A DNA stretch of 64,000 bases from Haliotis rufescens (Eukaryota): contig NW_025963813.1 in the NCBI RefSeq assembly GCF_023055435.1, forward strand, positions 38,502,001 through 38,566,000. The letters run 5' to 3'. Under the pieces are notes generated by a model, which saw only the letters and a program-made list of their open reading frames with translations, had not been told where the DNA came from and did no database searches. This document shows, one piece after another, positions 4,311 through 47,360 of the stretch (within the stretch, counting starts at the first letter, position 1; every line of letters begins with the position of its first letter). Both the position numbers and the translations under genes were made by a program.

Positions 4311-4692
4311 CCCAGCTGAATGAGGGTTAAAGTGACGTGTCACAATACGGCACCGAGCGGTATACAAAGCCAGCGGACGGCCCAACTCTATGAGGGTGAA
4401 AGTGATGTGTCACAATACGGCACAAAGCGGTATACAAAGCCAGCGGATGGCCCAGCTCAATGAGGGTGAAAGTGATGTGTCACAATACGGCGCCGAGCGG
4501 TATACATAGCCAGTGGACGGCCCAGCTAAATGAGGATGAAAGTGACGTGTCACAATACGGCACTGAGCGGTATACAAAGCCAGCGGACGGCCCAGCGCAA
4601 TGAGGGTTAAAGTGATGTGTCACAATACGGCACTGAGCGGTATAAAAAGCCAGCGGACGGTTCAGCTAAATGAAGGTTAAAGTGAAGTGTCA
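4311..4692. repeat. 70-bp minisatellite, ~5.5 units (copy A)
   Basis: Unit cccagctaaatgagggtgaaagtgatgtgtcacaatacggcaccgagcggtatacaaagccagcggacgg; a partial unit at 4012-4062 is split off by a retroelement-tail insertion. Confidence 0.92.
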
Positions 4693-4779
4693 CCTATCGT
4701 ATTTTGTACAATTCCATCGGCTCCTGCCATAACTAACACGTGAAGCCATTATTTCGATCCACTCACTGATGCTCTATCG

Positions 4780-6090
4780 ACTCGTGTGACGTCTGTGTTA
4801 TTTTTGACATTTACATGAACTCCGGTGACATATCCAAACATCATTTCCATTCGCTCTTCCATGCTCATGAACAGGTACGTAACCAGTGCACAACTTTTTG
4901 TCACCCACGCATAATGTTCGAAGAAGCAGTGTGGCCCCATTGTTATTCTGTACATTCACAATAGCTCCATCCCTCAGTAACATATCAACCCACTTTTAAG
5001 AACCACTCTTTAATGCAGAGTGGTGTGTCGCTTGTGTTTGTTGCGTAAGTTAACAACAGCTCTGATATTCAGTAACATAATAAATCTCTTTCGATCGACG
5101 CATTGATGCTCTATGGAGAACTGTGGCTCCCTTGTTATTCTGTATATACACATCAGCTCCAACCGTCAGTAACAGGTCAACACACTCTTTCCATCGTGAC
5201 ATTGATGCGCCATGAAGTGGTGTGTTGCCTGTGTTATTCCGTACATTCACACCAGCTCCAGGCTCCAGTAATATATCAACACACTCTTTCGATCCATGCA
5301 TTGATTCACCATGTAGTGGTGTGTCGTCCGCACTGTCTCTTCATTAACATCAACTCAGAGCTTCAATAACACATCAACAAACAATTACGACCCATGCATT
5401 GATACTCCATGTGGTGGCGTGTCGACCGTACTATTCTCTACGTTTACACCAGCTCCAGCCTTCAGTAACAGATCAACACACTCTTTCGTAGACGCATTGA
5501 TCCTTCATGAAGTGGTGTGTTGTCTGGTGTATTATGTACATTCACTTCAGCTCCAACCTTCAGTAACACATCAATCCGTTCTTTCGATCCACGCATTCAT
5601 CCTCCATAAAGCTATATGTCGCCTGTGTTATTTTCTACATTCACAGCAGCTCAAGCCTTCAGTAACAGATCAACACACACTTTCGTTCATAGAATTGGTA
5701 CGCCATGAAGTGGTGTGTTGCCAGTGTTGTTTTGTAATTGGACATCAGCTCTAGCCTTCAGTAAGAGATCAACACATTCTCTCGATCCAGATCTTGATGT
5801 TTTATGGGGTGGTGTGTCGCCAGTGCTATACTGTACTTTTACATCAGCTCCAGTCTTCAGTAACAGATCAACACACTCTTTCGATCCATGCATTGATGCT
5901 GCATGGAGTGGTGTGTCTCCTGTTTCGTTTTGTACTTTAACATCAGCGCCGGCCTTCAGTAACATATCGACACACTTTTGAGATCCACACCCTGATGCTT
6001 CATGAAGTGGAGTATCGCCTGACTCGTTTTGTACTTTTACATCAGTTCCAGCCTCCAGTAACATATCAACACACTTTTGAGATCCACACC
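4780..6090 (-). pseudogene. Untranslated, frameshifted continuation of the ankyrin array downstream of the copy A stop
   Basis: Ankyrin ORF fragments 5687-6094, 5050-5301 and 4798-4983; a 1-bp deletion relative to the repeat consensus creates TGA at 6091-6093. Confidence 0.85.
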
Positions 6091-6920
6091 TCATGTGTTA
6101 TGAAGTGGTGTGTCACCTGTCCTATTCTGTACCTGTATATCAGCCCCAGCCTTTAGTAACAGTTCAACACACTCTTTCGATCCATAGATTGATGCTTCAT
6201 GAAGTGGCGTGTAACCTGAGTTGTTTTGTACTTTTACATCAGCCCCAGCCTTCAGTAACAGTTCAACACACTTTTGAAATCCACACCTGGATGCGTTATG
6301 AAGTGGAGTGTCGCCTGTCTCGTTTTGTACTTTCACATCAGCCCCAGCCTTCAGTAACAGTTCAACACACTTTTGAGATCCACACCTGGATGCGTTATGA
6401 AGTGGAGTGTCGCCTGTCTCGTTTTGTACTTTCACATCAGCCCCAGCCTTCAGTAACAGTTCAACACACTCTTTCAATCTATACATTGATACTCCATAGG
6501 GTGTCTCGCGTCCTATCTTATCCCCAACATTCACGCCATCCTTCTGTAACAGGTCAAAACGCTCTCTCAATCTACGCCCTGATGCGTTATGAAGTGGAGT
6601 GTCGCCTGTCTCGTTTTGTACTTTCAAATCAGCTCCAGCCTTCAGTAATATATCAACACACTTTTGAGATCCAAACATTGATGCGTAATGAAGTGGTGTG
6701 TCGCCTGATCTATTCTGTACCTGTATGTCAGCCCCAGCCTTCAGTAACAGGTCAACACACTCTTTCGATCCATGGATTGATGCTCCATGAAGTGAAGTGT
6801 GGCCTGAGTTGTTTTGTACTTTTACATCAGCCCCAGCCTTCAGTAACAGTTCAACACACTCTTTCGATCCATGGATTGATGCTTCATGAAGTAGTGTGTT
6901 TCCTTTGTTATCCTCTACAT
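4880..6920 (-). repeat. 99-bp ankyrin-coding tandem array, copy A (~20 units, ~8 translated)
   Basis: Recurrent plus-strand unit ttcagtaacagatcaacacacttttgagatccacac...gaagtggagtgtcgcctgtctcgttttgtacttttacatcagccccagcc at 99-nt period. Confidence 0.93.
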
Positions 6921-9900
6921 TTACTCTCGCTGCAGCTGCCGGGGTGTCTCTTGACTTGATACCTGAATTATTGTCAGCTTTCTGCTTTCTGAAACCTTCA
7001 GCCGATTGACCAACTTCTTTTTCGTCTTCTTCGTGAGACGTATAAAGCTGTTCAAGTAAAAATAGAAGAACCTCTTGGCTTCCTCCCTTGCACGCTGAGT
7101 GCAGTGCAGTATTTCCATTTGGAGCCACCATGCCGACATTTGCTCCTTTTCCCGTCAAAACTCTCACGACATCCAGGTTTCCACTTTCACATGCTTCATG
7201 AAGAGGGAGTTGTCCATGCTTCGATATCATATTGACTGTGGCCCCTTTATCAAACAGCATCTTAACAACATCCAGATTCCCACTTTTACATGCAGCACAT
7301 ACTTCATCGCCACTAAGTTCTGCTCCTGCCACAAGTAAAGTCTTAACAATGTTCGCATGTCCAATTGTACATGCTTCATACAAAGGATTAAAATAGAAAT
7401 CGTGACCAGCAACATTTGCTCCTCCCTCCAGCAAAGCTTTCACAATGCCCTCCGTGCCTGTCCGACATGCCAAAACCAGAGATGCGTACGTACATTCACT
7501 ATCAACATCAACTCTATCCAGCACCAGTTTTACAATTTCTTCCTCTCCACTGAGACAAGCCGCAAATAGAGGAGACATATACTTATACTTATACTTATCC
7601 ACATAACCTACTGCTCCTCTATCCAGTAACAGTTTCACTACGCCCTTGTGACCAGACAGACACGCTTGATAAAGTGAAGTTTTTTTCATCTTATCTGTTA
7701 CATCAATATCTACACCCTTGTCAATCACATACTCCACAGCTGACACAAGACCATGTTTACACAGGTAATGCAGCACAGTTCTGTCATAGCTGTCCGATGC
7801 ATTCAGATCAGGAAGAAGGCGAAGTATCTGGCGTACAAAGTTACAATCTCCAGTCTCCGCTGCTATCATCAGCGGGGTCTGTTCAGGTTCTCCGTAGGTC
7901 GCATTGATGTCCAGTTTTACATGTTGTGTCAGATATGTCAGCACATTTCCTGCAGCATGTTTGCACACACCCAATAAGATCTCATCTATTTCTGACTGAT
8001 GCAGTGTAATGTTTCCCTTCTCCAGTATGTATTTCACCATGGTTGGGGATTTGTTGCTTGGCAGCAACTCCAAACAGGATGCTCGTGTTTTTCTATCAGT
8101 GTTCCTCAGAAATGTATTTACAGATATCTGATATTGTACTTTCAGTATGTTCATCAGTTTATCAATGAAATCAGGATCACAACAGATTTGGTGTGAGATT
8201 ACATATGCCAAGTTGCCCAGCTGAATCTCCATGGCAAATCTCTGCACCAAGTTGTCAATGCAGAAAAGTGGGATTTCTGCAACGAAACCTTGGTTTTCAA
8301 CAGTCCCATGCCTAAGTCGCTGGTTGATGAATGAGAGACTACAATTCTCAATGACAAATACTGGATCTTTTTCAGTCAGAAGAAATGCAACACTGTCATA
8401 GATTGATGGATGGTCAAACATGTATGTTCCATCTTCCAGCTTCAGATATGACCCAACAAGCTTATTGGCAGATGATACACAGTCATGCATCTTGTATTTG
8501 TCTTTATACAATTCAGACTGAGACACTTTACCATCTCCTTGGATCATTGCCTTCAGGAGTTGATGCTTTGATTTATTGTATATTAATTTCTGCAAAGTTT
8601 GGTTTAGAAATTCAAGAGGTCTTGTGAAAAACTCCTTTGCTGATACCTTGGCATTCTGTTTAAAGGCTGTGGCAAAAAGTCTACAGACATGTGGAAACCC
8701 ATGTGGACACGCGATGTAGCTTAATTCAAACATGACCTTTTTCTCAATGTCAACACCTTCCTTTCGAAAAACTGATTTCAAAATATTCAGTTTTTCTTCA
8801 CGATCTATGGTTGGTGAGAGTTCCACTAGATGTTTACTGCTTGTAAGATATTCTCTCGCTCTTCCAAGGTCTGGTAAAGAGGATTTAAGTACATAATCAC
8901 GACCTACAAGAATAAATAAAGATTGTTTCTTTTCATTTTGCTCTGGATTGATGGCAGTTGACTTATTCAAAGCACCATTTAGATCCAAGTCAGGCTTTGG
9001 CAAATCAAGAATCGGACGAAGAGAGGGTCTCCATTTGGTCCACTCTGCAACGTCAAATTCCAGATCACCAAATATATCATCCATCATAATCACTGGGTTG
9101 GTACAAGTCCTGGTGACCTCATTGAACTCGTCTGGGGACACAACTTGGTATACTTGTCTCCCTTGGCTGTGCAGATCTCTGAGGGCCATGTAGGCCACTG
9201 TAGACTTCCCCTCTCCTGGTCTTCCCTTTATTGTCACCCATGTTGCTCCTCTGTCAATCTTCTCCATCACCTCCTTATGTGCCTGTGTCGTAACCATACC
9301 TTGGGTCCATGACTGTATCCTTGATTCTGTTCGTTCTGAAAAAAATATAATAAAATTGATTGAACTGTACAAATCCGATCCTTCTTTCACACATACTGAC
9401 CTAGTGTTATTGTTACAAGCAACCTCTCCTTAATGTATAAATACATTTCACATTTGCTCCACATGATAATAAATTATTAAAACTAAGAACTGATCACTGT
9501 GATATATATCAGTAAATGAGCTGAGAAATTGTGTTAACAAATCTGAGAGTTAATATTTTTGGCTATTGAAAAGTAAATTTGTAAAACAACATCGCAAAGA
9601 ATAAGAACTTTTTCTTAACACAAAACTTGTTAACAAATTAAGCATGCCATTAATGGTCATATTGTTTTACATTGACATCCGTTATCTACTTTTACTATCA
9701 TTTTCATGTTAACTTCTACGTTCGATAATGTAATGGCTCAGAATTGTGGAAATAGTACCTGATGAAGATATGGAACACGTTTCAAGAAAATTAAAAGTAT
9801 CATCTACTATATAGTGCATAGATATTATATTGCAGAAGATGCACGTAGCGTAAGTCTCTTGTCCCTGTTTCTGCATATACCTCTTGCATCAATGTATTGA

Positions 9901-13308: not shown

Positions 13309-13644
13309 CTTTCCCTTACACAAGCCAACACTTTACTTCTCGTCTGCATGTGCACTGTTTTCACGCCATCAATTACTGTGTTATTGATCCTTGCTAACTT
13401 TACTTGGGTGAATCGTTTCTCTATGACTACGACCTGCCCTCTCTGTCGCTCATATTTTCCAGTTGGAATATTTTTATTATTGGGCTTGCTGTTTCCTTCA
13501 GTACCACCACAGGAGAAAAGACATTTATATCAATCTGATGCTACAACTGTTCTCATTCTTGAACGGTGAATTCTCGGAAACCTGCACGAATAAGAAAATA
13601 AAAACACAACTACGTTTGTAAACACACCTCTGCAGATACAGTCT

Positions 13645-15200
13645 TTCAGAGTGTAAGGGAGAGAGTGACCAGGGTGTAGTGGAGGCAGTGTTCCGGGTGA
13701 AGATGAGAGAGTGACCAGGGTATAGTTGAGGCATTGTTCAGGGTGTTGGTGAAAGAAGGATTAGGGTGTAGTGGAGGCAGTGTTGAGAGTGTAGGTGAGA
13801 GAGTGACCAGGGTGTAGTTGAGGCATTCTTCAGGGTGTATGTGGATAGAGTGACAAGGGTGTAGTGGAGGCAGTTTTCAGGGTATTGGTGAGAGAGTGAT
13901 TAGGGTGTATTTGAGGCAGTGTTGAGGGTGTAGATAAGAGAGTGACCAGGGTGTAGTTGAGGCAGGGTATAGTGGAGCCAGTGTTCAGGGTGTAGGGGAG
14001 AGAGACTCCTGAGTGTAGTGGAGGCAGTGTTCGGAGAGTAGGTGAGAGAGTGGCCAGGGTGTAGTGGAGACAGTGTGCAGGGTTTTGGGAAGAGAGAGTC
14101 CAGAGTATAGTGGAGCCAGTGTTCAGAGTGGAGATGAGAGAGTGACCAAGGTGTAGTGGAGGCAGTGTTCAGGGTGTAGGTGAGAGAGTGACCAGGGTGT
14201 AGTGGAGGCAATGTTCAGGGTGTAGGTGAGAGAGTGATGAGGGTGTAGTGGAGGCAGTGTTGAGGGTGTAGGAAAGATTTACCAGGGTGTAGTGGAGGCA
14301 GTGTTGAGGGTGTAGGAAAGATTTACCAGGGTGTAGTGGAGGCAGTCTTCAGAGCTTAGGGGAGAGATTTACCAGGGTATAGTGGAGCCAGGTCACAGGG
14401 TGTAGGTGAGAGAGTGACCAGGGTGTAGTGGAGGCAGTGTTCAGGGTGTAGGTGAGAGAGTGACCAGGGTGTAGTGGAGGCAGTGTTGAGGGTGTAGGAA
14501 AGATTTACCAGGGTGTAGTGGAGGCAGTCTTCAGAGCTTAGGGGAGAGATTTACCAGGGTATAGTGGAGCCAGGTCACAGGGTGTAGGTGAGAGAGTGAC
14601 CAGGGTGTAGTGGAGGCAGTGTTCATGGTGTAGGTGAGAGAGTGACCAGGGTGTAGTGGAGGCAGTGTTCAGGGTGTAGGTGAGAGAGTGACCAGGGTGT
14701 AGTGGAGGCAGTGATCAGGGTTTTTGGAAGAGAGATCTCACGGTATAGTAGTGTCAGTTCACAGGGTTTAGGTGAGAGAGTGACCAAGGTGTAGTGGAGC
14801 CAGTGTTGAGGGTGTAGGAAAGATTTACCAGGGTGTAGTGGAGGCAGTGTTCAGGGTGTAGGAAAGATTTACTAGGGTGTAGTGGAGGCAGTCTTCAGAG
14901 CTTAGGGGAGAGATTTACCAGGGTGTAGTGGATGCGATATTCATAGTGTTTGGGAAAGAATGCCCAGGTTGTAGTGGCGGCTGTATTCAGGGTGGGTGTT
15001 GAGGAGAGTGCGTCCAGGATGTCGTGACGGATGTTTTCATGGTGTTGGGGAGAGATTAACCAGGGTGTAGTAGAGGCAGTATTCAGGGTGGTTGTAGGGG
15101 AGAGAGCGTCCATTATGTAGTGACGGATGTTTTCAGGGTGTTAGAGAGAGATGTAGTGTACCAAGGTGTAATGGAGGCAGTGTCGGGGTGTAAGTGGGTA
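13645..15200. repeat. G-rich 46-bp minisatellite (copy A, heterogeneous)
   Basis: Unit gtaggtgagagagtgaccagggtgtagtggaggcagtgttcagggt. Confidence 0.92.
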
Positions 15201-32265: not shown

Positions 32266-33208
32266 CCCAGCTGAATGAGGGTTAAAGTGACGTGTCACAA
32301 TAGGGCACCGAGCGGTATACAAAGCCAGCGGACGGCCCAGCTGAATGAGGGTTAAAGTGATGTGTCACAATACGGCACCGAGCGGTATACAAAGCCAGCG
32401 GACGGCCCAGCTGAATGAGGGTGAAAGTGATGTGTCACAATACGGTACCGAGCGGCATACAAAGCCAGCGGACGGCCCAGCTCAATGAGGGTTAAAGTGA
32501 TGTGTCACAATACGGCACTGAGCGGTTTACAAAGCCAGCTGACGGCCCAGCTAAATGAGGGTGAAAGTGATGTGTCACAATAGGGCACCGAGCGGTATAC
32601 AAAGCCAGCGGACGGCCCAGCTAAATGAGGGTGAAAGTGACGTGTCACAATAGGGCACCGAGCGGTAAACAAAGCCAGCGGACGGCCCAGCTCAATGAGG
32701 GTTAAAGTGATGTGTCACAATACGGCACCGAGCGGTATACAAAGCCAGCGGACGGCCCAGCTAAATGAGGGTGAAAGTGATGTGTCACAATACGGCACCG
32801 AGCGGTATACAAAGCCAGCGGACGGCCCAGCTCAATAAGGGTTAAAGTGACGTGTAACAATACGGCACTGAGAGGTATACAAAGCCAGCGGACGGCCCAA
32901 CTCTATGAGGGTGAAAGTGATGTGTCACAACACGGCACAAAGCGGTATACAAAGCCAGCGGACGGCCCAGCTAAATGAGGGTGAAAGTGACGTGTCACAA
33001 TACGGCACCGAGCGGTATACAAAGCCAGCGGACGGCCTAGCTCAATGAGGGTTAAAGTGACTTGTCACAATACGGCACTGAGCGGTATACAAAGCCAGCG
33101 GACGGCCCAGCTAAATGAGGGTGGAAGTGATGTGTCACAATACGGCACCGAGCGGTATACAAAGCCAGCGGACGGCCAAGCTAAATGAGGGTTAAAATGA
33201 TGTGTCAC
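32266..33208. repeat. 70-bp minisatellite, ~13.5 units (copy B)
   Basis: Period 70 (cccag ending at 32270, 32340, 32410...). Confidence 0.95.
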
Positions 33209-33299
33209 CTGCCGTATTTTGTACATTTCCATCGGCTCCTGCCATAACTGACACATGAAGCCATTCTATCGATCCACTCGCTGATACTCTATCGACTCC

Positions 33300-36200
33300 T
33301 GTGACGTCTGTGTTATTATTTCCATTTATATGAACTCCGGTAACATATCAAAACATCATTTCCATTCGCTTTTCGATGCTCATGAAGAGGTACGTAACCA
33401 GTGCACAACCTTTTGACACCCACGCATAATGTTCCAAGAAGCAGTGTGGCCCCATTGTTATTCTGTACATTCACAATAGCTCCAGCCCTCAGTAACATAT
33501 CAACACACTTTTGAGAACCACTCTTTAATGCAGAGTGGTGTGTCGCTTGTGTTGCGTAAGTTAACAACAGCTCTGATATTCAATAACATAATAAATCTCT
33601 TTCGATCTACGCATTACTGCTCCATGGAGAAGTGTGGCTCCCTTGTCATTCTGTACATACACATCAGCTCCAACCGTCAGTAACAGGTCAACACACTCTT
33701 TCCATCGTGACATTGATGCGCCATGAAGTGGTGTGTTGCCTGTGTTATTCCGTACATTCACACCAGCTCCAGGATCCAGTAATATATGAACACACTCTTT
33801 CGATCCATGCATTGATTCACCATGTACTGGTGTGTCGCCCGCACTGTCTCTTCGTGTACATGAGCTTAAAGCTTCAATAACACATCAACAAACAATTACC
33901 ACCCATGCATTGATATTCCATGTAGTGATGTGTCTTCCGTACTATTCTCTACATTTACATAAGTTCCAGCCATCAGTAAAACATCAACATACTATTTCGA
34001 CCCATGCATTATAACTCCATGTAGTGGTGTGTCGTCCGTACTGTCTTTATGTTTACATCAGCTCCAACCTTCAATTATAACAGATTAACACACTCTTTCG
34101 TAGACGCATTGATCCTCCATAAGTGGTGTGTCGCCTGTGTTATTCTCTACATTCACTGCAGCACCAGCCTTCAGTAACAGTTCAACACACTCTTTCGATC
34201 CATGGATTGATGCTGCATGAAGTGGTGTGTCGCCTGAGTTGTTTTGTACTTTTATATCAGCGCCAGCCTTCAGTAACATATCAACACACTTTTGAGATCC
34301 ACGCCTTGATGCTCTATGAAGTGAAGTGTCGCCTGTTTTATTCTCAACATTCACATCAGCTGCAACCTTCAGTAAAATATCAACCCACGTTTGAGATCTA
34401 CACCCTGATGCCTGTCTCGTTTTGTGCTATGAGTTATGAAGTGGTGTGTCGCCCGATCTATTCGGTACCTGTATATCAGCCCAAGCCTTCAGTAACAGGT
34501 CAACACAGTCTTTCGATCCATGGATTGATGCTGCATGGAGTGCCGTGTAGCCTGAACAACACACTTTTGAGATCCACACCTGGATGCTTCATGAAGTGGA
34601 GTGTCGCCTGTCTCGTTTCGTACTTTAACATCAGCTCCAGCCTTCAGTAACATATCAACACACTTTTGAGATCCAAACATTGATGCGATATGAAGTGGTG
34701 TGTCGCCTGCTCTATTCTGTACCTGTATGTCAGCCACAGCCTCCAGCAACAGGTTAACACAGTCTTTAGATCCATACATTGATGCTGCATTGAGTGCTGT
34801 GTAGCCTGAGTTGTTTTGTACTTTTACATCAGCCCCAGCCTTCAGTAACAGGTAAACACACTTTTTCGATCCATGGATTGATGCTGCATGGAGTGCTGTG
34901 TAGCCTGAGTTGTTTTGTACTTTTACATCAGCCCCAGCCTTCAGTAACAGATCAACACACTTTTGAAATCCACACCTGGATGCTTCATGAAGTGGAGTGT
35001 CGCCTGTCTCGTTTTGTACTTTTACATCAGCCCCAGCCTTCAGTAACAGATCAACACATTGTCAGATCCACATCTCGATGCTTCATGAAGTGGAGTGTCG
35101 CCTGTCTCGTTTTGTACTTGTACATCAGCCCCAGCCTTCAGTAACAGATCAACACACTTTTGAGATCAACACCTGGATGCTTCAGGAAGTGGAGTGTCGC
35201 CCGTCTCCTTTTGTACTTTTACATCAGCTCCAGCCTTCAGTAACAGATCAACAAACTTTTGAGATCGATACCTCAATACTTTATGAAGTGGTGTGTCGCC
35301 TGTTCTATTCTGTACCTGTATATCAGCCCCTGCCTTCAGTAACAGGTCAACACACTCTTTCGATCCATACATTAATGTTCTACAGAGTGGCGCGAGTCCT
35401 ATCTGATCCCCGACATTCAGGCCAGCCTTCTGTAACAGGTAAATACGCTCTTCCAATCCGAGCCCTAATACGTTATGAAGTGGAGTGTCGCCTGCCTCGT
35501 TTTGTACTTTAACATCAGCTCCAGCCTTCAGTAACATATCAACACACTTTTCAGATCTGCACATTGATGCGTTATGAAGTGGTGTTTCGCCTGTCTTGTT
35601 TTGTACTTTTACATCAGCTCCAGCCTTCAGTAACAGGTCAACACACTTATGAGATCCACATCTGGATGCTTCATGAAGTGGAGAGTAGCCTGTCTTGTTT
35701 TGTACTTTTACATCAGCCCCAGCCTTCAGTAACATATCAACACATTTTTGAGATCCACATCTGGATGCATCATGAAGTGGAGTGTCGCCTCTCTCGTTTT
35801 GTACTTTCACATCAGCCCCAGCCTCCAGTAACAGATCAACACACTTTTGAGATCCGCACATTGATGCTGCATGGAGTGCTGTGTAGCCTGATTTGTTTTG
35901 TACTTTTACATCAGCCCCAGCCTTTAGTAACAGATCAACACACTTTTGAGATCCGCACATTGATGCTGCATGGAGTGCTGTGTAGCCTGATTTGTTTTGT
36001 ACTTTTACATCAGCCCCAGCCTTCAGTAACAGATCGACACACTTTTGAGATCCACACCTGGATGCTTCATGAAGTGGAGTGTAGCTTGTCTCGTTTTGTA
36101 CTTTTACATCAGCCCCAGCATTCAGTAACAGGTCAACACACTTTTCAGATCCACACCTGGATGCTTTATGAAGTGGAGTGTCGCCTGTCTCGTTTTGTAC

Positions 36201-36422
36201 TTTTACATCAGCCCCAGCCTTCAGTAACAGATCAACACACCTTTCAGATCCACACCTGGATGCTTCATGAAGTGAAGTGTCGCCTGTCTCGTTTTGTACT
36301 TTTACATCAGCCCCAACCTTCAGTAACAGGTCAACACACTTTTGAGATCCAAATATTGATGCTGCATGGAGTGCTGTGCAGCCTGATTTGGTTTGTACTT
36401 TTACATCAGCCCCAGCCTCCAG
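33300..36422 (-). pseudogene. Untranslated continuation of the ankyrin array downstream of the copy B stop (about 30 further repeats)
   Basis: TTA>TAA at 36423-36425; the same frame appears to stay open to GGA>TGA at 35166-35168; then frameshifted fragments 34489-34779, 34085-34354, 33561-33812, 33316-33567. Confidence 0.88.
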
Positions 36423-38080
36423 TTACAGATCAACACACTTTTCAGATCCACACCTGGATGCTTCATGAAGTGGAGTGTCGCTTGTCTCGTTTTGTACTTT
36501 TACATCAGCCCCAGCCTTCAGTAACAGGTCAACACACTTTTCAGATCCGCACATTGATGTTGCATGGAGTGCTGAGCAGCCTGATTTGTTTTGTACTTTT
36601 ACATCAGCCCAAGCCTTCAGTATCAGATCAACACACTTTTCAGATCCACACCTGGATGCTTCAAGAAGTGGAGTGTCGCCTGTCTCGTTTTGTACTTTTA
36701 CATCAGCCCCAGCCTTCAGTAACAGATCAACACACTTTTCAGATCCACACCTGGATGCTTCATGAAGTGGAGTGTCGCCTGTCTCGTTTTGTACTTTTAC
36801 ATCAGCTCCAGCCTGCAGTAACAGATCAACACACCTTTGACATCCATACCTCAATACTTTATGAAGTGGTGTGTCGCCTGTTCTATTCTGTACCTGTATA
36901 TCAGCCCCAGCCTTCAGTAACAGGTCAACACACTCTTTCGATCCATACATTGATACTCTATGGAGTGTCACGAGTCCTCTCTGATCCCCGACATTCAAGC
37001 CAGCCTTCCGAAACAGGTAAAAACGCTCTTCAGATCCGAGCCCTGATACGTTATGAAGTGGAGTATCGCCTGTCTCGTTTTGTACTTTAACATCAGCTCC
37101 AGCCTTCAGTAACATATCAACACAATTTTGAGATCTGCACATTGATGCGACATGAAGTGGTGTGTCGCCTGTTCTATTCTGTACCTGTATATCAGCCCCA
37201 GCCTTCAGTAACAGGTCAACACAGTCTTTAGATCCATACATTGATGCTGCATGGAGTGCTGTGTAGCCTGAGTTGTTTTGTACTCTAACATCAGCCCCAG
37301 CCTTCAGTAACAGGTAAACACTCTTTTGAGATCCGCACATTGATGCTGCATGGAGTGCTGTGCAGCCTGAGTCGTTTTGTACTTTTACATCAGCCCCAGC
37401 CTTCAGTAACAGATCAACACACTTTTGAGATCCAAACATTGATGCGTTATGAAGTGGTGTGTCGCCTGTCTCGTTTTGTACTTTTACATCAGCTCCAGCC
37501 TTCAGTAACAGGTCAACACACTTTTCAGATCCATACCTGGATGCGTTATGAAGTGGTGTGTCGCCTGTCTCGTTTTTTACTTTTACATCAGCTCCAGCCT
37601 TCAGTAACAGGTCAACACACTTCTGAGATCCATACCTCAATGCGGTATGAAGTGGAGTGTCGCCTGTCTCGTTTTGTACTTTTACATCAGCTCCAGCCTT
37701 CAATAACATATCAACACACTTTTGAGATCCAAACATTGATGCGATATGAAGTGGTGTGAAGCCTCGTCTATTCTGTGCCTGTACATCAGCCCCAGCCTTC
37801 AGTAACAGGTCAACACACTCGTTCGATGCATGGATTGATGCTCTATGGAGTGCTGTGTAGCTTGAGTTGTTTTGTACTTTTACATCAGCCCCAGCCTTCA
37901 GTAACAGATCAACACACTTTTCAGATCCACACCTTGATGCATCATGAAGTGGAGTGTCGGCTGTCTCGTTTTGTACTTTCACATCAGCTCCAGCCTTCAG
38001 TAACATATCAACACACTCTTTCGATCCATGGATTGATGCTACATGGAGTGCTGTGTTTCCTGTGTTATCCTCTATATTTA
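33450..38080 (-). repeat. 99-bp ankyrin-coding tandem array, copy B (~46-47 units, ~16 translated)
   Basis: Same 99-nt unit; 16 full repeats plus one partial counted in the 1370-aa ORF. Confidence 0.93.
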
Positions 38081-41000
38081 CTCTAGCTGCAGCTGCCGGG
38101 TTGTCTCTTGACTTGATATTTGAATTATTGTCAGCTTTCTGCTTTCTGAAACCTTCAGCCGATTCACCAACTTCTCTTTCGTCTTCTTCGTGAGACGTAT
38201 AAAGCTTTTCAAGTAAAAATAGAACAACCTCTTGGCTTCCTCCCTTACACGCTGAGTGCAGTGTAGTATTTCCATTTGGAGCCACCATGCTGACATTTGC
38301 TCCTTTCCCCGTCACAACTCTCACGACATCCATCTTTCCACTTTCGCATGCTGCATGAAGAGGGAGTTGTCCATCCTTCGATATCATATTGACTGAGGCT
38401 CCTTTATCAAACAGCATCTCAACAACATCCAGATTCCCACTTTTACATGCAGCACACACTTCATCGCCACTAAGTTCTGCTCCTGCCACAAGTAAAGTCT
38501 TAACAATGTTTGCATGTCCATGTGTACATGCTTGATACAGAGGCTTAAAATGGATATCCCGACCAGCAATATTTGCTCCTCCCTCCAACAAAGCTTTTAC
38601 TATTCCCTCAATGCCGCAAGCACATGCCCAACCCAGAGACCTATCCTTCAATTCACAATTAACATCAGTTCTATCCAGCACCAGTTTTACAACTTCTTCC
38701 TTGCCATTGAGACAAGCCGCAAGTAGAGGAGACTTATGATAGTTATCCACATAACCTACTGCTCCTCTATCGAGTAACAGTTTCACTAGGCCCTTGTGAC
38801 CAGACAAACACGCTAGAAAAAGTGAAGATTGACCCATCTGATCTGGTACATCAATATCTACACCCTTGTCAATGACATACTCCACAGCTGACACAAGACC
38901 ATGTTCACACAGGTAATGCAGCACAGTTCTGTCATAGCTGTCAGATGCATTCAGATCAGGAAGAAGGCGAAGTATCTGGTGTACAAAGTTACAATCTCCA
39001 GTCTCAGTTGCTATCATCAGCGGGGTCTGCTCACGGTGTCTGTATGTAGCATTGATGTCCAGTTTTAAATGTTTTGTCAGATATGTCAGCACATCACCTG
39101 CAGCATGTTTGTACACACCAAATAAGATCTCATCTATCTCCGTCTGATGCAGTGTAATGTTTCCCTTCTCCAGTATGTATTTCACCATGGTTGAACATTT
39201 GTTGCTTGGCAGCAACTCCAAACAGGATTCTAGTGTTTCTTCATCAGTCTTCCTCAGAAATGTATTTACAGATATTTGATATTGTTCTTTCAGTATGTTC
39301 ATCAGTTTATCAATGAAGTCTGGATCACAACAGATTTGATGTGAGATTACATATGCCAGGTTGCCCCGCTGAATCGCCAAGGCAAATCTCTGCACCAAGT
39401 TGTCAATGCAGAAAGGTGGGATTTCTGCAACCAAACCTTGGGTTTCAACAGTCCCATGTCTAAGTCGCTGGTTGATGAATGAGAGACTAGAATTCTCAAT
39501 GACAAATACTGGATCTTTTTCAGTCAGAAGAAATGCAACACTGTCATAGATTGATGGATGGTCAAACATGTATGTACCATCTTCCAGCTTCAGATATGAC
39601 CCAACAAGCTCATTGGCAGATGATACACAGTCATGCATCTTGTATTTGTCTTTATACAATTCAGACTGAGACACTTTCCCATCTCCTTGGATCATTGCCT
39701 TCAGGAGTTGACACTTTGATTTATTGTTTATTAATTTCTGCAACGTTTGGTTTAGAAATTCAAGAGGACTCACGAAAAACTCCTTTGCTGATACCTTGTC
39801 ATTCTGTTTAAAGGCTGTGGCAAATAGCCTACAGACATGTGGAAACCCATGTGGACACGCGATGTGACTTAATTTAAAAATGACTTTTTTCTCAATGTCA
39901 ACACCTTCCATTTGAAAAATTGATTTCAAAATATTCAGTTTTTCTATATGATCTGTGGTTGGTGAGAGTTCGACTAGATGTTTACTGCTTGTAACATATT
40001 CCCTCGCTCTTCCAAGGTCTGGTAAAGAGGATTTTAGTACATAATCACGTCCCACAAGAATAAATAAAGATTGTTTCTTTCGATTTTGCTCTGGATTGAT
40101 GTCAGTTGAACCATTTAAAGTTAGCTCCAAGTCAGGATTTTGCAAATCAAGAATGGGACGAAGAGAGGGTCTCCACTTGGTCCACTCTGCAACGTCAAAT
40201 TCCAGATCACCAAATATATCATCCATCATAATCACTGGGTTGGTACAAGTCCTGGTTACCTCATTGAACTCTTCTGGAGACACAACTTGGTATACTTGTC
40301 TCCCTTGGCTGTGCAGATCTCTGAGGGCCATGTAGGCCACTGTAGACTTCCCCTCTCCTGGTCTTCCCTTTATTGTCACCCATGTTGCTCCTCTGTCAAT
40401 CTTCTCCATCACCTCCTTATGTGCCTGTGTCTTAACCATACCTTGGGTCCATGACTGTATCCTTGATTCTGTTCGTTCTGAAAAAATATAATACAATCGA
40501 TTGAACTGTACAAATCCGATCCACCTTTCACACATACTGACCTAGTGGTATTTTTACAAACAACCTCTCCTTATTGTGTAAATACATTTCACATTTGCTC
40601 CACTTGATAATAAATTATTAATACTAAGAACTGATCACTGTGATATATATCAGTAAATGAGCTGAGAAACTGTGTTAACAAATCTGAGAGTTATTATTTT
40701 TTGCTACTCAAAAGTAAATTTGTAAAACAACAAAAAAGAAAGAAACAAGAACATTTTCTTCAGACAAAACTTGTTAACAAATTAAGCATGCCATTAATGG
40801 TCATATTGTTTTACATTGACATCCGTTATCTACTTTTCCTATCATTTTCATGTTAACTTCTACGTTCGAGAAATTAATGGCTCAGTGAGTTAGTGAGTTG
40901 GGTTCAACGCCACTTTTAACAGTATTCCAGTTACATCACGGCGTGTCAGCTTAATGTGGTTAGGAAAGCTCGAAGTGATGCAGGTCTCAGACGTTTAGCA

Positions 41001-43969: not shown

Positions 43970-46900
43970 AGTCCAGGGTGTAGTGGGGGCTGTTTCCAAT
44001 GTGTCGGGGAGAGTGAAGAGGGTGCATTGGAGGTAATGTGTATTGGAGAGAACATCCAGTGTGAAGAGAGCGTCCAAGGTGTAGTGGGGGCTGTTTTCAG
44101 TGTGTATTGGAGAGAGCGTCCAATGTGTAGTTGGGGCTCTTTTCAGTGTTGGGGTGTATTGGAGGCAGTGTTCAGTGTGTATTGGAGAGAACTCCAGTGT
44201 GAAGAGAGCGTCCAAGGTATAGTGGGGGCTGTTTTCAGTGTGTATTGGAGAGAGCGTCCATGGTGTAGTGGAGGCAGTGTTCAGGGTGCATTGGAGAGAA
44301 CTCCAGTGTGAAGAGAGCGTCCAATGTATAGTGGGGGCTGTTTTCAGGGTGTAGGTGAGAGAATGACCAGGGTGTAGTGGAGCCAGTGTTCAGGGTGTAG
44401 GTGAGAGAGTGACCAGGGTGTAGTGGAGGCTGTGTTCAGGGTGTAGGTGAGAGAGTGACCAGGCTGTAGTTGAGGCAGTATTCAGGGTGTAGGTGAGAGA
44501 ATGACCAGGGTGTAGTGGAGGCAGTGTTCAGGGTATAGGTGAGGGAGTGACCAGGGTGTAGTGGAGGCAGTGTTCAGGGTGTAGGTGAGAGAGTGACCAG
44601 GGTGTAGTGGAGGCAGTGTTCAGGGTGTAGGTGAGAGAGTGACCAGGGTGTAGTGGAGGCAGTGTTCGGAATGTAGGTGAGAGAGTGACCAGGGTGTAGT
44701 GAAGGCAGTATTCAGGGTTTAGGTGAGAGAATGACCAGGGTGTAGTGGAGGCAGTGTTCAGGGTGTAGGTGAGAGAGTGACCAGGGTGTAGTGGAGGCAG
44801 TGTTCGGAATGTAGGTGAGAGAGTGACCAGGGTGTAGTGGAGGCAGTGTTCAGGGTGTAGGTGAGAGAATGACCAGGGTGTAGTGGAGGCAGTGTTCAGG
44901 GTGTAGGTGAGAGAGTGACCAGGGTGTAGTGGAGGCAGTTTTAAGGGTGTAGGTGAGAGAATGACCAGGGTGTAGTGGAGGCAGTGTTCGGAATGTAGGT
45001 GAGAGAGTGACCAGGGTGTAGTGGAGGCAGTGTTCAGGGTGTAGGTGAGAGAGTGACCAGGGTGTAGTGGAGGCAGTGTTCGGAATGTAGGTGAGAGAGT
45101 GACCAGGGTGTAGTGGAGGCAGTATTCAGGGTTTAGGTGAGAGAATGACCAGGGTGTAGTGGAGGCAGTGTTCAGGGTGTAGGTGAGAGAGTGACCAGGG
45201 TGTAATGGAGGCAGTGTTCGGAATGTAGGTGAGAGAGTGACCAGGGTGTAGTGGAGGCAGTGTTCAGGGTGTAGGTGAGAGAGTGACCAGGGTGTAGTGG
45301 AGGCAGTGTTCAGGGTGTAGGTGAGAGAGTGACCAGGGTGTAGTGGAGGCAGTGTTCGGAATGTAGGTGAGAGAGTGACCAGGGTGTAGTGGAGGCAGTG
45401 TTCAGGGTGTAGGTGAGAGAATGACCAGGGTGTAGTGGAGGCAGTGTTCGGAATGTAGGTGAGAGAGTGACCAGGGTGTAGTGGAGGCAGTGTTCAGGGT
45501 GTAGGTGAGAGAGTGACCAGGGTGTAGTGGAGGCAGTGTTCAGGGTGTAGGTGAGAGAGTGACCAGGGTGTAGTGGAGGCAGTGTTCAGGGTGTAGGTGA
45601 GAGAGTGACCAGGGTGTAGTGGAGGCAGTGTTCAGGGTGTAGGTGAGAGAGTGACCAGGGTGTAGTGGAGGCAGTGTTCGGAATGTAGGTGAGAGAGTGA
45701 CCAGGGTGTAGTGGAGGCTGTGTTCAGGGTGTAGGTGAGAGAATGACCAGGGTGTAGTGGAGGCAGTGTTCAGGGTGTAGATGAGAGAGTGACCAGGGTG
45801 TAGTGGAGGCAGTGTTCAGGGTGTAGGTGAGAGAGTGACCAGGGTGTAGTTGAGGCAGTGTTCAGGGTGTAGGTGAGAGAGTGACCAGGGTGTAGTGGAG
45901 GCAGTGTTCAGGATGTAGTGGAGGCAGTGTTCAGGGTGTAGTGGAGGCAGTGTTCAGGGTGTAGGTGGGAGAGTGACCAGGGTGTAGTGGAGGCAGTGTT
46001 CAGGGTGTAGTGGAGGCAGTGCCTTTACTCTGGGAACACAACCGTTATACATAAATACCCAGGTTTGAAAAGTGATTGTAATTACACATTTGAACCTGCG
46101 TATCTCATAAGCAATATAATCAACTTAAACCTAGTTTCGGTTTCGCCAGGGCTCCATTTTCGTGTAATAAACATCATTCAGCATGGTATAGCATATTATA
46201 CACAAGCACATCTATACATATACCGCGTTCTCAAATTAATTAGAATTGCTAGCTACTTTAGATTTACATACTGTCAATGAAGTCACTGATACATTGCCTC
46301 GGAACAGGCCAACTGTAGGGGTGTGTGCAAACCCATCTTATCTGTGACTATAAGGGAACAGGGCTCCTCGCAGGGAAGATATGTCTATGCTGTGTATGTG
46401 AGTTTTATAATGCGCTACAATGCAATGTGGATTTCGTGTTGATTCATATAACAACAGCTCGGTAACATATAACTACCGCTTGGAGTAATGATCTGAAAGG
46501 TTACTTGCCTTGACTGCGAAGACAGTCTGTAAGGATTAAATTTCTTCGAATAATTATCATATACACAGGTGGGGATGGGGGATTTGGGGTGGGGGGTGGA
46601 TGCGGGAGGGGGGGGGGGGGGGGGGGAGGGTAGTCCTCCGAGTCATTTTCGGAGGCAGTATTCAGGATGTTGGGGAGTGAAGGGTGTAGTGAAGGTTGTG
46701 TTCAGGGTGTAGACTGGTGCGTCCAGGGTGTAGTGGAGGCAGTGTTCAGGGTGCAGGGAAGAGAGAGTCCAGGGTATAGTGGAGGCAGTACTCAGTGTGC
46801 AGGGTAGAGAGAGTCCAGGGTGTAGTGGAGGCAGTTTTAAGTGTGCAGGGGAGAGAGAGTCTATGGAAAAGTGGCGGCAGTATGCAGGGTGTAAGGGAGA

Positions 46901-47360
46901 GATTAACCAGGGTATAGTCGAGGCAGTATTCAGGGTGTAGAGGAGAGTGCGTTCACGATGTTGTGACGGTTGTTTTCAGGGTGTTGGGGAAAACCTTACT
47001 CCGGTTTATCGGATGCAGTATTCAGAGTGTATAGGAGAAATCGTCCAGGGTGTATTGGCCGCTGTTTTCAGGGTGTAGATGAGAGAGTTCAGGATATAGT
47101 GGAGGCAGTATTCAGTGTGGGTGTAGGGGAGGGAGCGTCCAGGATGTAGTGACGGATGTGTCCAGGGTGTTGGGGAGAGTGCGTCCAGGATGTAGTGACG
47201 GATGTGTTCAGGGTGTTGGGGAGAGTGCGTCCAGGATGTAGTGACGGATGTGTTCAGGGTGTTGGGGAGAGTGCGTCCAGGATGTAGTGACGGATGTGTT
47301 CAGGGTGTTGGGGAGAGATTTACCAGGGTGTTGTGAAGGCAGTGTCGGGGTGTAAGAGGG
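43970..47360. repeat. G-rich 46-bp minisatellite (copy B; highly homogeneous at 44345-46020, interrupted at ~46021-46650)
   Basis: Period 46 (44581, 44627...); variant units with cggaat and gaat. Confidence 0.93.

What the first reader, a model, noticed from the sequence alone, without database searches (positions are those of the whole stretch)
33300..36425. Silent reservoir of ankyrin cassettes behind the stop codon
Seen: in both copies translation stops mid-array through different single lesions (A: 1-bp deletion giving TGA at 6091; B: TTA>TAA at 36423). About 12 (A) and 30 (B) further repeats follow, and in B the first ~1.25 kb appears still open and in frame. The most distal repeats are decayed and shared between A and B, while the proximal ones are homogenised. 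Inference: a stop in what looks like the last exon should escape NMD, so a movable stop could set sensor length, with the downstream units acting as donors for conversion or unequal crossover. Alternatives are plain pseudogenisation or consensus errors in a hard repeat.
Basis: partly seen in the sequence, partly recalled or inferred. Interest (0 to 1): 0.75.

Follow-up and report, generated by a model that had tools for sequence, protein, structure and literature searches.

The report
Stranded ankyrin repeats behind premature stops
Two neighbouring red-abalone immune-type receptor genes end inside their ankyrin-repeat arrays and drag a trail of dead repeats behind the stop, which looks like ordinary erosion of a recombining repeat array and not like a working store of spare cassettes.

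Summary
Both genes lie on the minus strand and encode an nSTAND3 NTPase plus 99-bp ankyrin units. Both stop inside the array: copy A at TGA 6091-6093, copy B at TAA 36423-36425. Twelve (A) and about 31-33 (B) units follow. In B the next 418 codons are open.

The reservoir reading is not supported.
- A's one-base deletion is not private. Paralogues D and E on the same contig carry it too, with coding arrays of 8.4, 58.8 and 33.2 units in front of it. So array length changes upstream of a fixed stop.
- All 33 post-stop units of A, D and E match post-stop units of other paralogues (90-100%). They match their own coding units at only 65-90%, so no exchange is visible.
- B's TAA is a young private substitution. 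Sister copy C (99% identical) has an intact codon there and its own private stop four units earlier. B and C share an older TGA (35166-35168) and a frameshift.
- B and C differ equally before and after the stop (0.97% and 0.94%), with dN/dS about 1.
- The open 1.25 kb is expected by chance (P about 0.7).

Public reads did not cover the stop, and expression stays untested. The closest precedent is zinc fingers after the stop in KRAB-ZNF genes.

The parts
36423..40535 (-). Copy B, large last coding exon: nSTAND3 NTPase, divergent ankyrin repeats, then 16.7 homogenised 99-bp ankyrin units
   Evidence: ORF list. Pfam nSTAND3 61.9 bits against a cutoff of 27.2, plus Ank families. RefSeq protein P0002 ends at the same stop.
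36423..36425 (-). Private TAA stop of copy B in unit B17 (unit consensus and sister copy C have TTA)
   Evidence: Sequence. The B versus C difference at 36424. C17 reads CVDLLLEAGADV.
35169..36422 (-). Recently orphaned units B17(end)-B30(start): 418 codons still open, in frame with the ORF
   Evidence: The chance of staying open after 7-8 substitutions is 0.67-0.71.
35166..35168 (-). Older TGA (GGA in the consensus) in unit B30, shared with copy C (C30 and C49): the stop of the B/C ancestor
35023..35120 (-). Unit B31, 98 bp, with a one-base deletion shared with C31 and C50
34627..35022 (-). Units B32-B35: intact units, now out of frame with the ORF
   Evidence: They are 93-98% identical to coding units of B, A and D.
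34472..34626 (-). Units B36 and B37 fused by a deletion of about 44 bp (shared with C55/C56)
34352..34471 (-). Unit B38, 120 bp: counterpart of the family's terminal 'QV.NR.GDTPLHN' unit, here with a 21-bp insertion carrying TAG (shared with C57)
   Evidence: Alignment.
33228..34351 (-). Old tail B39-B50: decayed units that align position by position with the tails of paralogues A, C, D, E and F
   Evidence: The 99% B-C identity tract ends near 34100.
32266..33208 (.). 70-bp minisatellite (13.5 copies) that begins inside the last ankyrin pseudo-unit
6091..9390 (-). Copy A, large last coding exon: nSTAND3 NTPase plus 8.4 homogenised units. The TGA at 6091-6093 comes from a one-base deletion shared with paralogues D and E
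   Evidence: RefSeq protein P0001 ends ...TPLHNT at this stop.
4713..6037 (-). Tail of copy A, units A10-A21: fossil units orthologous to D61-D73 and E36-E49
4311..4693 (.). 70-bp minisatellite (5.5 copies) behind the tail of copy A

Best explanation
These are two members of a large red-abalone family of NLR-like receptors: an nSTAND3 NTPase followed by an ankyrin-repeat array, all in one big last coding exon.

How the array behaves. It evolves as a tandem repeat. Unequal crossover and conversion keep the core units alike and change their number. The units at the 3' edge drop out of that exchange.

How the tail forms. Stop-gain lesions (nonsense, one-base deletions) that cut off the end of the array are tolerated. 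Whatever lies behind a new stop becomes untranslated and decays at the neutral rate. Over time this leaves a trail, with the oldest and most decayed units lying farthest from the ORF.

Copy A still uses an old stop that it shares with paralogues D and E.

Copy B carries a young private TTA>TAA substitution. It orphaned 13 units that had been coding in the B/C ancestor, whose ORF ended at TGA 35166-35168.

The stretch 33300-36425 is therefore a stack of three layers: freshly orphaned units, units orphaned earlier, and an ancient fossil tail. It is not a maintained reservoir.

What is shown and what is inferred. Shown: the anatomy, the sharing pattern of the lesions, and the neutral-like divergence. 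Inferred: that truncations are tolerated by selection, and that B still makes a shortened receptor.
For: 1. Family. Pfam finds nSTAND3 plus Ank in both ORFs. The genome holds more than 100 matches. Named RefSeq proteins of Haliotis rufescens match at 100% (copy A), 81% (copy B's model) and 77% (copy F's model) identity to the copy-A query, and each ends at the stop I read in its gene.

2. A's stop is old. A9, D60 and E35 carry the same one-base deletion that gives TGA. In front of it lie 8.4, 58.8 and 33.2 units.

3. The tails are fossils.
- The six tails align unit by unit.
- Their Jukes-Cantor distances (A-D 0.062, A-E 0.049, D-E 0.054) are close to synonymous divergence in the N-terminal half (0.086, 0.063, 0.055).
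- 33 of 33 post-stop units of A, D and E have their best match in a post-stop unit of another paralogue (90-100%). Their best match to a coding unit of their own gene is 65-90%.
- 0 of 100 coding units of A, D and E have their best match in these old tails.

4. B's stop is young and private.
- B and C differ at 32 of 3254 positions over units 1-33, with no indels. One of the 32 is the stop itself.
- C has its own stop in unit 13.
- Both share the TGA in unit 30 and the frameshift in unit 31.

5. There is no constraint signal on the array since the B/C split.
- Divergence is 0.97% before the stop and 0.94% after it.
- By Nei-Gojobori counts, 3.5 synonymous and 11.5 nonsynonymous changes before the stop give a ratio of about 1.0. 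After it there are 1.0 synonymous and 8.0 nonsynonymous changes.
- 4.7-4.8% of possible substitutions create a stop. That predicts roughly 0.6-0.8 new stops per lineage, and one is seen in each lineage.

6. Lesion age rises with distance from the ORF. The order is: private (B17, C13), shared by B and C (units 30, 31, 36/37, 38), shared by A-E (one-base deletion in A15/B41), shared by all six (A19, A20).

7. The pattern recurs in the family. 3 of 8 more distant paralogues also have ankyrin-like units after the stop. In one of them (L043) the stop-bearing unit is duplicated together with its block.

8. Precedent in print. Central repeats of an array are homogenised more than repeats at its ends (passage in PMC5615363). 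Zinc-finger units occur after an in-frame stop in KRAB-ZNF genes (passages in PMC2865497).
Against: - The TAA in B rests on one assembly only. The four public runs laid on it were short contigs with no usable cover at 36423-36425: the bin 36230-36429 has depth 0 in three runs and 18.5 in one, and no variant row appears.
- Nothing here shows whether B or A is transcribed, or how far the 3' UTR runs.
- Some orphan units of B/C are the nearest relatives of coding units in other paralogues. This holds for 6 of 100 coding units, for example B35-D53 at 98% and B32-A7 at 97%. I attribute that to recent orphaning, but ongoing exchange would look the same.
- The paralogues are mosaics. The B-C identity drops from 99% to 95% to 89% inside and behind the tail. 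D and E share 100%-identical units, and tail units at 99%. So 'shared by descent' and 'spread by ectopic conversion' cannot be told apart for the shared lesions.
- A dN/dS near 1 in the array fits diversifying selection as well as no selection, and the counts are small.
- The N-terminal half of B/C shows an excess of synonymous changes (9 of 20, P = 0.019). Its contrast with the array is not significant (Fisher P = 0.11).
Confidence: 0.75

Rival explanations
1. Functional reservoir. The post-stop units are kept as donors, and conversion or unequal crossover moves them in and out of the ORF, so that the stop position tunes sensor length.
For: - Post-stop units remain recombinationally active. 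C13-C33 was duplicated to C34-C52 at 1870 of 1874 aligned bases identical.
- 12.7 units behind B's stop are still intact and in frame.
- Orphan units B32, B35, C20 and C54 are 95-98% identical to coding units of A, D and E.
- The fungal literature reports repeats of NLR pseudogenes kept nearly intact, apparently by exchange (passage in PMC13449251).
Against: - Where a stop is old enough to test (A, D, E), no exchange is seen. 33 of 33 tail units are positional orthologues, and 0 of 100 coding units are nearest to a unit of these old tails.
- The tails diverge at about the synonymous rate and accumulate stops and frameshifts.
- The intact state of B's first post-stop units needs no maintenance (P about 0.7).
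- Length differences among A, D and E arise upstream of a fixed stop.
Confidence: 0.08
2. Consensus error. The TAA at 36423-36425 is a base-call error in a hard repeat, and the real ORF of B runs on to TGA 35166-35168.
For: - The lesion is a single substitution seen in one assembly.
- Public contigs do not cover it.
- Sister copy C has TTA there.
Against: - It is a substitution, not a homopolymer-length change.
- The published red abalone reference was built from HiFi reads: 616 scaffolds, 1.3 Gb (abstract of PMC9709998). G000 has 615 contigs and 1.334 Gb. That they are the same assembly is my inference.
- B differs from C at 31 other positions in the same 3.25 kb, so reads of the two copies are distinguishable.
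- All other lesions (A's deletion, the TGA in unit 30, the frameshift in unit 31, C's stop) are each seen in two or more independent copies.
- Even if this rival were true, 20 units would still follow the next stop.
Confidence: 0.06
3. Whole-gene pseudogenes. B and C are dead genes that are no longer expressed as protein, and the stops in the array are just the first visible lesions.
For: - The array evolves with dN/dS about 1 on both sides of the stop.
- One new nonsense mutation per lineage is the neutral expectation.
- No RNA evidence was obtained.
Against: - The 819-codon N-terminal half is open in both copies. It shows 9 synonymous against 11 nonsynonymous changes (dN/dS 0.34; P = 0.019 for the synonymous excess).
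- RefSeq annotates B as protein-coding.
Confidence: 0.2
4. Stop bypass. In-register splicing inside the array, or readthrough, skips the stop-bearing unit, so that some post-stop units are translated.
For: The RefSeq model of B omits 291 nt (units B11-B13) in register, as if spliced inside the array. The 418 codons behind the stop are in frame.
Against: - None of the 54 placements of that 291-nt gap has GT..AG. Only two have GC..AG.
- The model may reflect transcripts of a shorter allele or of a paralogue.
- No read evidence exists.
Confidence: 0.03

Closest known systems
KRAB zinc-finger genes with fingers behind the stop (for example human ZNF252)
   Same: A tandem array of domain units in one large last exon is cut by an in-frame stop. 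Complete and degenerate units continue behind it in the 3' UTR. [quoted passage not shown]
   Different: Here the units are 33-residue ankyrin repeats of an NLR-like NTPase in a mollusc. The units are far more alike at DNA level (93-100%). The same fossil tail is shared by six paralogues.
Fungal NLRs with highly internally conserved repeats (Podospora NWD/HET-E type)
   Same: A STAND NTPase is followed by near-identical WD40, ANK or TPR units that are gained, lost and shuffled. Unequal crossover and exchange between paralogues are proposed, and pseudogenised members keep nearly intact repeats (introduction passages of PMC13449251). Here the coding arrays range from 8.4 to 58.8 units, and 100%-identical units are shared by D and E.
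   Different: This is an animal gene with an nSTAND3 NTPase rather than NACHT or NB-ARC, and there is no RIP. Positive selection at surface positions was not tested here. Exchange between paralogues is only suggested, because whole tracts including the tails are also 99% alike.
Edge effect in tandem arrays (satellite DNA theory)
   Same: Central repeats are homogenised and repeats at the array ends diverge (passage in PMC5615363, which cites McAllister and Werren 1999). The first unit and the tail units are positional orthologues across paralogues, while the core has turned over.
   Different: This is a coding array, so the 3' edge is also marked by stop codons, and selection on the protein is superimposed.
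Silent-cassette donor systems (lamprey VLR, chicken pseudo-V genes, Borrelia vls, Neisseria pilS) - recalled from general knowledge, no call
   Same: Untranslated units homologous to an expressed array lie next to it.
   Different: Transfer from silent units to the expressed copy, which defines those systems, was looked for and not seen. The units decay instead of being maintained.

Membership tests
nSTAND3 NTPase - ankyrin NLR-like receptors | nSTAND3 NTPase domain above the Pfam gathering score | tested here: met
   PF20720 scores 61.9 bits (B) and 65.1 bits (A) against a cutoff of 27.2. The P-loop GRPGEGKST can be read in both ORFs.
nSTAND3 NTPase - ankyrin NLR-like receptors | C-terminal array of repeat units as presumed sensor | tested here: met
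   Ank, Ank_2 and Ank_4 hit with E-values of 1e-80 to 1e-165. There are 8.4 to 58.8 homogenised units in six paralogues.
nSTAND3 NTPase - ankyrin NLR-like receptors | Role in immunity or cell death | not testable with these tools
   No functional or expression data were obtained. The role is inferred from the architecture only.
Repeat-array gene truncated by an in-frame stop, with fossil units in the 3' UTR (KRAB-ZNF type) | Stop inside the array, with units continuing in register behind it | tested here: met
Repeat-array gene truncated by an in-frame stop, with fossil units in the 3' UTR (KRAB-ZNF type) | Post-stop units evolve without constraint | tested here: met
   Tail distances of 0.049-0.062 are close to N-terminal dS of 0.055-0.086 for A, D and E. 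Stops and frameshifts accumulate distally.
Repeat-array gene truncated by an in-frame stop, with fossil units in the 3' UTR (KRAB-ZNF type) | Post-stop units are part of the transcript (3' UTR) | tested here: inconclusive
   Two runs that are only guessed to be RNA hold short contigs on the tail and on the N-terminal part. They carry variants of other copies and could be DNA.
Silent-cassette donor (reservoir) system | Sequence transfer from silent units into the expressed array | tested here: not met
   0 of 100 coding units of A, D and E are nearest to a unit of the old tails of those genes. 33 of 33 tail units are positional orthologues. For the young orphan units of B the test has no power.
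Silent-cassette donor (reservoir) system | Silent units maintained intact by selection or exchange | tested here: not met
   Decay is progressive. Divergence between B and C is equal before and after the stop.
Fungal-type NLRs with highly internally conserved repeats | Near-identical units, with the unit number varying between copies | tested here: met
   Units are 93-100% alike within a gene. Coding arrays are 8.4, 16.7, 12.8, 58.8, 33.2 and 17.1 units long.
Fungal-type NLRs with highly internally conserved repeats | Exchange of units between paralogues | tested here: inconclusive
   D and E share 100%-identical units although dS is 0.055. However, parts of their tails are also 99% alike, so large conversion tracts or regional mosaicism explain it equally well.
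Fungal-type NLRs with highly internally conserved repeats | Positive selection at surface positions of the units | not tested
   This is outside the present finding. Another note of the scan (s1-816329) deals with it.

The most novel reading that the evidence does not exclude
A conveyor with recapture. The array grows in its core by unequal crossover and is eroded at its 3' end by tolerated stop-gains. Freshly orphaned units that are still intact, such as the 12.7 in-frame units behind B's TAA, form a standing reserve. A single unequal crossover or conversion that removes the stop-bearing unit can pull them back into the ORF. Individuals would then differ in receptor length and content by switching such blocks on and off.
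Probability: 0.1. Interest if true: 0.65.

Novelty: new member of a known kind. Interest (0 to 1): 0.3.

Why it matters
The result gives a clean, datable example of how repeat-based immune-type receptors in an invertebrate gain and lose sensor units. Six paralogues share one fossil tail, and their coding arrays differ sevenfold in length.

It shows that repeats behind a stop need no function. They follow from array dynamics plus tolerated truncation.

For annotation, it warns that ORF length in this family of more than 100 genes is set by recent single-base lesions. It also warns that gene models inside the arrays can be unreliable, as shown by the 291-nt gap in the RefSeq model of B.

If the recapture idea were true, the family would have a germline switch for receptor length. 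That can be tested with population long reads.

Tried and rejected
1. Reads. One run search and one laying of four runs on 33230-39200. All four runs were short Logan contigs. The 200-bp bin containing the stop had depth 0 in three runs and 18.5 in the fourth, with no variant row. So the TAA was neither confirmed nor refuted, and nothing can be said about expression. The two 'RNA?' runs are guesses.

2. Haplotig. I considered that C is an uncollapsed haplotype of B. I rejected this because identity falls to 95% in the distal tail and to 89% behind it.

3. Three hits in one unit. The counterpart of the terminal unit carries a different lesion in A/D/E, in F and in B/C, and I asked whether that needs a special explanation. 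I rejected this as weak. In B/C the unit already lay in non-coding sequence where about half of the units carry lesions. F lacks four tail units, so the positional homology is uncertain.

4. Identical units shared by D and E as proof of exchange limited to coding units. I dropped this because tail units D62-D66 are also 99% identical to E.

5. Orthologues in other abalone species. Among the 53 listed hits of the protein search with copy A, only three proteins were above 50% identity, all from H. rufescens. The best hits from other Haliotis species were 44-48% identical. Candidates were limited to 0.55-1.75 times the query length, so D and E themselves could not appear.

6. Literature. 'nSTAND3' occurs in two records in the library, the journal and preprint versions of one fungal paper. 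No paper on post-stop ankyrin units was found with the terms. For PMC13449251, PMC2865497, PMC8195603 and PMC5615363 I read passages only. For PMC9709998 I read the abstract and outline. Supplements were not opened. Additional file 2 of PMC2865497 holds the ZNF252 sequences and may bear on that comparison.

7. The earlier-findings word search gave nothing.


Full report
WHAT IS THERE

The window holds two tandem copies of one gene on the minus strand, A (about 4.3-13.3 kb) and B (about 32-47 kb). Tandem Repeats Finder reports 99-bp arrays at 4941-6924 and 33410-38063. Their reverse complement encodes 33-residue ankyrin units.

The long ORFs are 6091..9390 (A, 1099 codons) and 36423..40535 (B, 1370 codons). 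Pfam finds an nSTAND3 NTPase near the start of both (65.1 and 61.9 bits against a cutoff of 27.2) and ankyrin families over the rest.

A protein search with A returns named RefSeq proteins of Haliotis rufescens. P0001 is 100% identical to A. By their sequences, P0002 is the model of B and P0003 the model of paralogue F. Each has extra N-terminal exons and ends exactly at the stop I read in the DNA. The genome handle G000 has 615 contigs and 1.334 Gb. This fits the published HiFi/Omni-C reference of the red abalone with 616 scaffolds and 1.3 Gb (abstract of PMC9709998). That they are the same assembly is my inference.

CHECK OF THE OBSERVATION

A nucleotide profile built from ten units finds 50 units in B (38078 down to 33228) and 21 in A (6921 down to 4713), all on the minus strand.

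In B, unit 17 reads CVDL*LEAGADV, with TAA where the consensus has TTA. The frame then stays open for 418 codons, down to TGA 35166-35168 in unit 30. Further downstream come:
- a 98-bp unit 31 (one base short);
- four intact units (32-35), now out of frame;
- units 36 and 37 fused by a deletion;
- a 120-bp unit 38;
- an increasingly broken tail.

In A, unit 9 is 98 bp long and yields TGA at 6091-6093. Twelve units follow.

The distal units of A and B pair one to one (A15-A21 with B41-B50, 84-100%) and share stops and frameshifts. The inner units of B are 93-98% alike. So all the facts in the finding hold.

THE SAME GENE ELSEWHERE IN THE GENOME

A six-frame search of G000 with the 819-residue N-terminal half of B gives more than 100 matches. 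Besides A and B there are four close paralogues on the same contig:

| Copy | Position on the contig | Protein identity to B's N-terminal half |
|---|---|---|
| C | 39.80 Mb | 99% |
| D | 39.71 Mb | 86% |
| E | 40.38 Mb | 86% |
| F | 39.30 Mb | 84% |

I fetched their arrays and cut them into units with the same profile (unit numbers below are those). Counted from the first homogenised unit to the first stop, the coding arrays are:

| Copy | A | B | C | D | E | F |
|---|---|---|---|---|---|---|
| Coding array (units) | 8.4 | 16.7 | 12.8 | 58.8 | 33.2 | 17.1 |

A'S STOP IS OLD AND FIXED

The stop-bearing units A9, D60 and E35 are all 98 bp long and carry the same missing base: GCAT-GAGG, where intact units have GCATC[C/A]AGG. 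This gives the same TGA. In front of this shared stop the array has 8.4, 58.8 and 33.2 units. In these three genes, length therefore changes by gain and loss of units upstream, not by moving the stop.

Behind the stop, the tails of all six paralogues align unit by unit. For A, D and E the tail distances (0.062, 0.049, 0.054) are close to the synonymous divergence of the N-terminal half (0.086, 0.063, 0.055). That is what untranslated, unconstrained DNA should show.

All 33 post-stop units of A, D and E have their best match in a post-stop unit of another paralogue (90-100%). Their best match to a coding unit of their own gene is only 65-90%. None of the 100 coding units of A, D and E has its nearest relative in those old tails. 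Where a stop is old enough for exchange to be visible, none is seen.

B'S STOP IS YOUNG AND PRIVATE

B and C are colinear over units 1-33 and differ at 32 of 3254 positions, without indels.
- One difference is the stop itself: at 36424, C has the consensus TTA.
- C has its own private stop in unit 13 (QA*ADV), where B is intact.
- By parsimony their common ancestor was open through both sites and ended at the TGA of unit 30. B and C share that TGA, the frameshift of unit 31, the 36/37 fusion and the 21-bp insertion of unit 38.

C is not a second haplotype of B. Identity to B is 99.3% upstream, 99.2% in the N-terminal half and 98.8% at 34100-34830. It falls to 95.2% at 33230-34100 and to 89.3% behind the array. 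A recent copy or conversion tract therefore ends inside the tail.

Since that event, the divergence and substitution counts are as follows:

| Region | Differences | Divergence | Synonymous : nonsynonymous | dN/dS |
|---|---|---|---|---|
| N-terminal half | 20 of 2457 | 0.81% | 9 : 11 | 0.34 |
| Array before the stop | 16 of 1653 | 0.97% | 3.5 : 11.5 | about 1.0 |
| Array after the stop, units 17-33 | 15 of 1599 | 0.94% | – | – |
| Open stretch behind the stop, 36422..35169 | – | – | 1.0 : 8.0 | – |

The synonymous excess in the N-terminal half has P = 0.019. The contrast between the N-terminal half and the array is not significant (Fisher P = 0.11).

In these codons 4.7-4.8% of all possible substitutions create a stop. 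Two things follow:
- Roughly 0.6-0.8 new stops are expected per lineage, and one is seen in each lineage.
- The 418 open codons behind B's TAA have a 0.67-0.71 chance of staying open by luck.

The 'still open 1.25 kb' therefore needs no maintenance.

HOW POST-STOP UNITS ARISE

I see three routes.
1. Point lesions strand everything downstream (B17, C13, unit 30, A9).
2. Blocks that contain a stop are duplicated. In C, units 13-33 recur as 34-52 with 1870 of 1874 aligned bases identical, including the stop of unit 13, the TGA and the frameshift. In the distant paralogue L043 the stop-bearing unit recurs about 1.58 kb downstream with the same local sequence.
3. Old blocks are carried along. B10-15 and B26-31 are a 92% colinear pair.

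Lesion age rises with distance from the ORF:
- private to one copy: B17, C13;
- shared by B and C: units 30, 31, 36/37, 38;
- shared by A-E: the missing base of A15/B41;
- shared by all six: the short units A19 and A20.

Among eight paralogues that are only about 50% identical, three have ankyrin-like units behind the stop (8, 26 and 9 units). Five have none detected and end in a partial unit (...NVQNNTGDTPVFH* and similar). Ending shortly after the GDTP motif is thus the usual C-terminus of the family. A, D and E end the same way.

MECHANISM

The best reading is terminal erosion of a recombining array.
- Core units are kept alike and change in number by unequal crossover and conversion.
- Units at the edges drop out of the exchange. 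This is the known edge effect of tandem arrays (passage in PMC5615363).
- Stop-gains near the 3' end cost little and are tolerated.
- What lies behind them decays at the neutral rate.

Shown here: the anatomy, the sharing pattern of the lesions and the divergence figures. Inferred: that truncations are tolerated by selection, and that B still makes a shortened receptor. The latter rests on the open N-terminal half with its synonymous excess and on RefSeq calling B protein-coding.

The same outcome is on record for KRAB zinc-finger genes. ZNF252 has eleven complete and degenerate fingers after its stop, and truncation by an in-frame stop is described as a known route (passages in PMC2865497).

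Fungal NLRs with highly conserved internal repeats are the closest functional analogue of the coding array. For them, exchange that keeps pseudogene repeats intact has been proposed (passages in PMC13449251).

WHAT REMAINS OPEN

- The TAA of B rests on one assembly. The single laying of reads allowed used four runs kept as short contigs. The bin 36230-36429 had depth 0 in three runs and 18.5 in one, and no variant was listed.
- Two runs that are only guessed to be RNA hold short pieces of both the N-terminal part and the tail. These pieces carry variants that match none of the six copies and may be DNA. I draw no conclusion on expression, 3' UTR length or NMD from them.
- From general knowledge (recalled, no call): many invertebrates trigger NMD by long 3' UTRs without exon junctions, so 'last exon, hence safe' is not assured.
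- Six of the 100 coding units of A, D and E have their nearest relative among the young orphan units of B/C (95-98%). Recent orphaning explains this, but continuing exchange is not excluded. This is the room left for the recapture reading.

VERDICT

Its reservoir interpretation is not supported, and plain erosion fits better. This is a new instance of a known kind of structure in a mollusc receptor family that is little described. Interest is moderate to low. Its value lies in the dated series of stops across six paralogues and in the warning it gives for gene models in this family.

Noticed in passing
window 36762-37105: The RefSeq protein of copy B (P0002) lacks 97 residues (291 nt, units B11-B13) that are open in the genome. 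None of the 54 placements of this gap has GT..AG ends, and two have GC..AG. It may be a modelling artefact, a shorter allele seen in RNA, or a real in-array splice.
   Followed up: partly
window 33230-34830 versus L031 (G000:C35:39792722-39794326): The 99% identity between B and its sister copy C ends inside the dead tail near 34100. Identity is 98.8% at 34100-34830, 95.2% at 33230-34100 and 89.3% behind the array. This looks like the boundary of a recent ectopic conversion or duplication.
   Followed up: partly
window 32266-33208 and 4311-4693; also L031: A 70-bp minisatellite starts inside the last ankyrin pseudo-unit (at its GDT motif). It has 13.5 copies behind B and 5.5 behind A, and it spans a longer stretch behind C.
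   Followed up: no
L033-L035 (G000:C35:39700235-39708500) and L036-L037: Paralogue D has an uninterrupted frame of 2776 codons with about 59 ankyrin units arranged in higher-order blocks. D and E share several 99-bp units at 100% identity, although synonymous divergence of their N-terminal halves is 0.055.
   Followed up: partly
window 34122 to 36307: One contig of DNA run X5 joins 34122 to 36307, skipping 2184 bases, with 31 other letters in between. It could be a shorter array in another animal or a piece of a paralogue.
   Followed up: no
window 11611-13323 (minus strand): The upstream exon of copy A contains an 84-bp coding tandem repeat (28-residue units rich in R, K and E). It is translated in RefSeq protein P0001. 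The model of B (P0002) has no such N-terminal repeat.
   Followed up: no
window 13645-15196 and 44037-47354: Long G-rich 23/46-bp tandem arrays with strong GC skew lie upstream of both gene copies. The one near B is much longer and more uniform (92% matches).
   Followed up: no
L043 (G000:C90:32107100-32117099): A distant paralogue has at least 25 ankyrin-like units behind its stop. The stop-bearing unit itself is repeated about 1.58 kb downstream, so a block including the stop was duplicated.
   Followed up: partly
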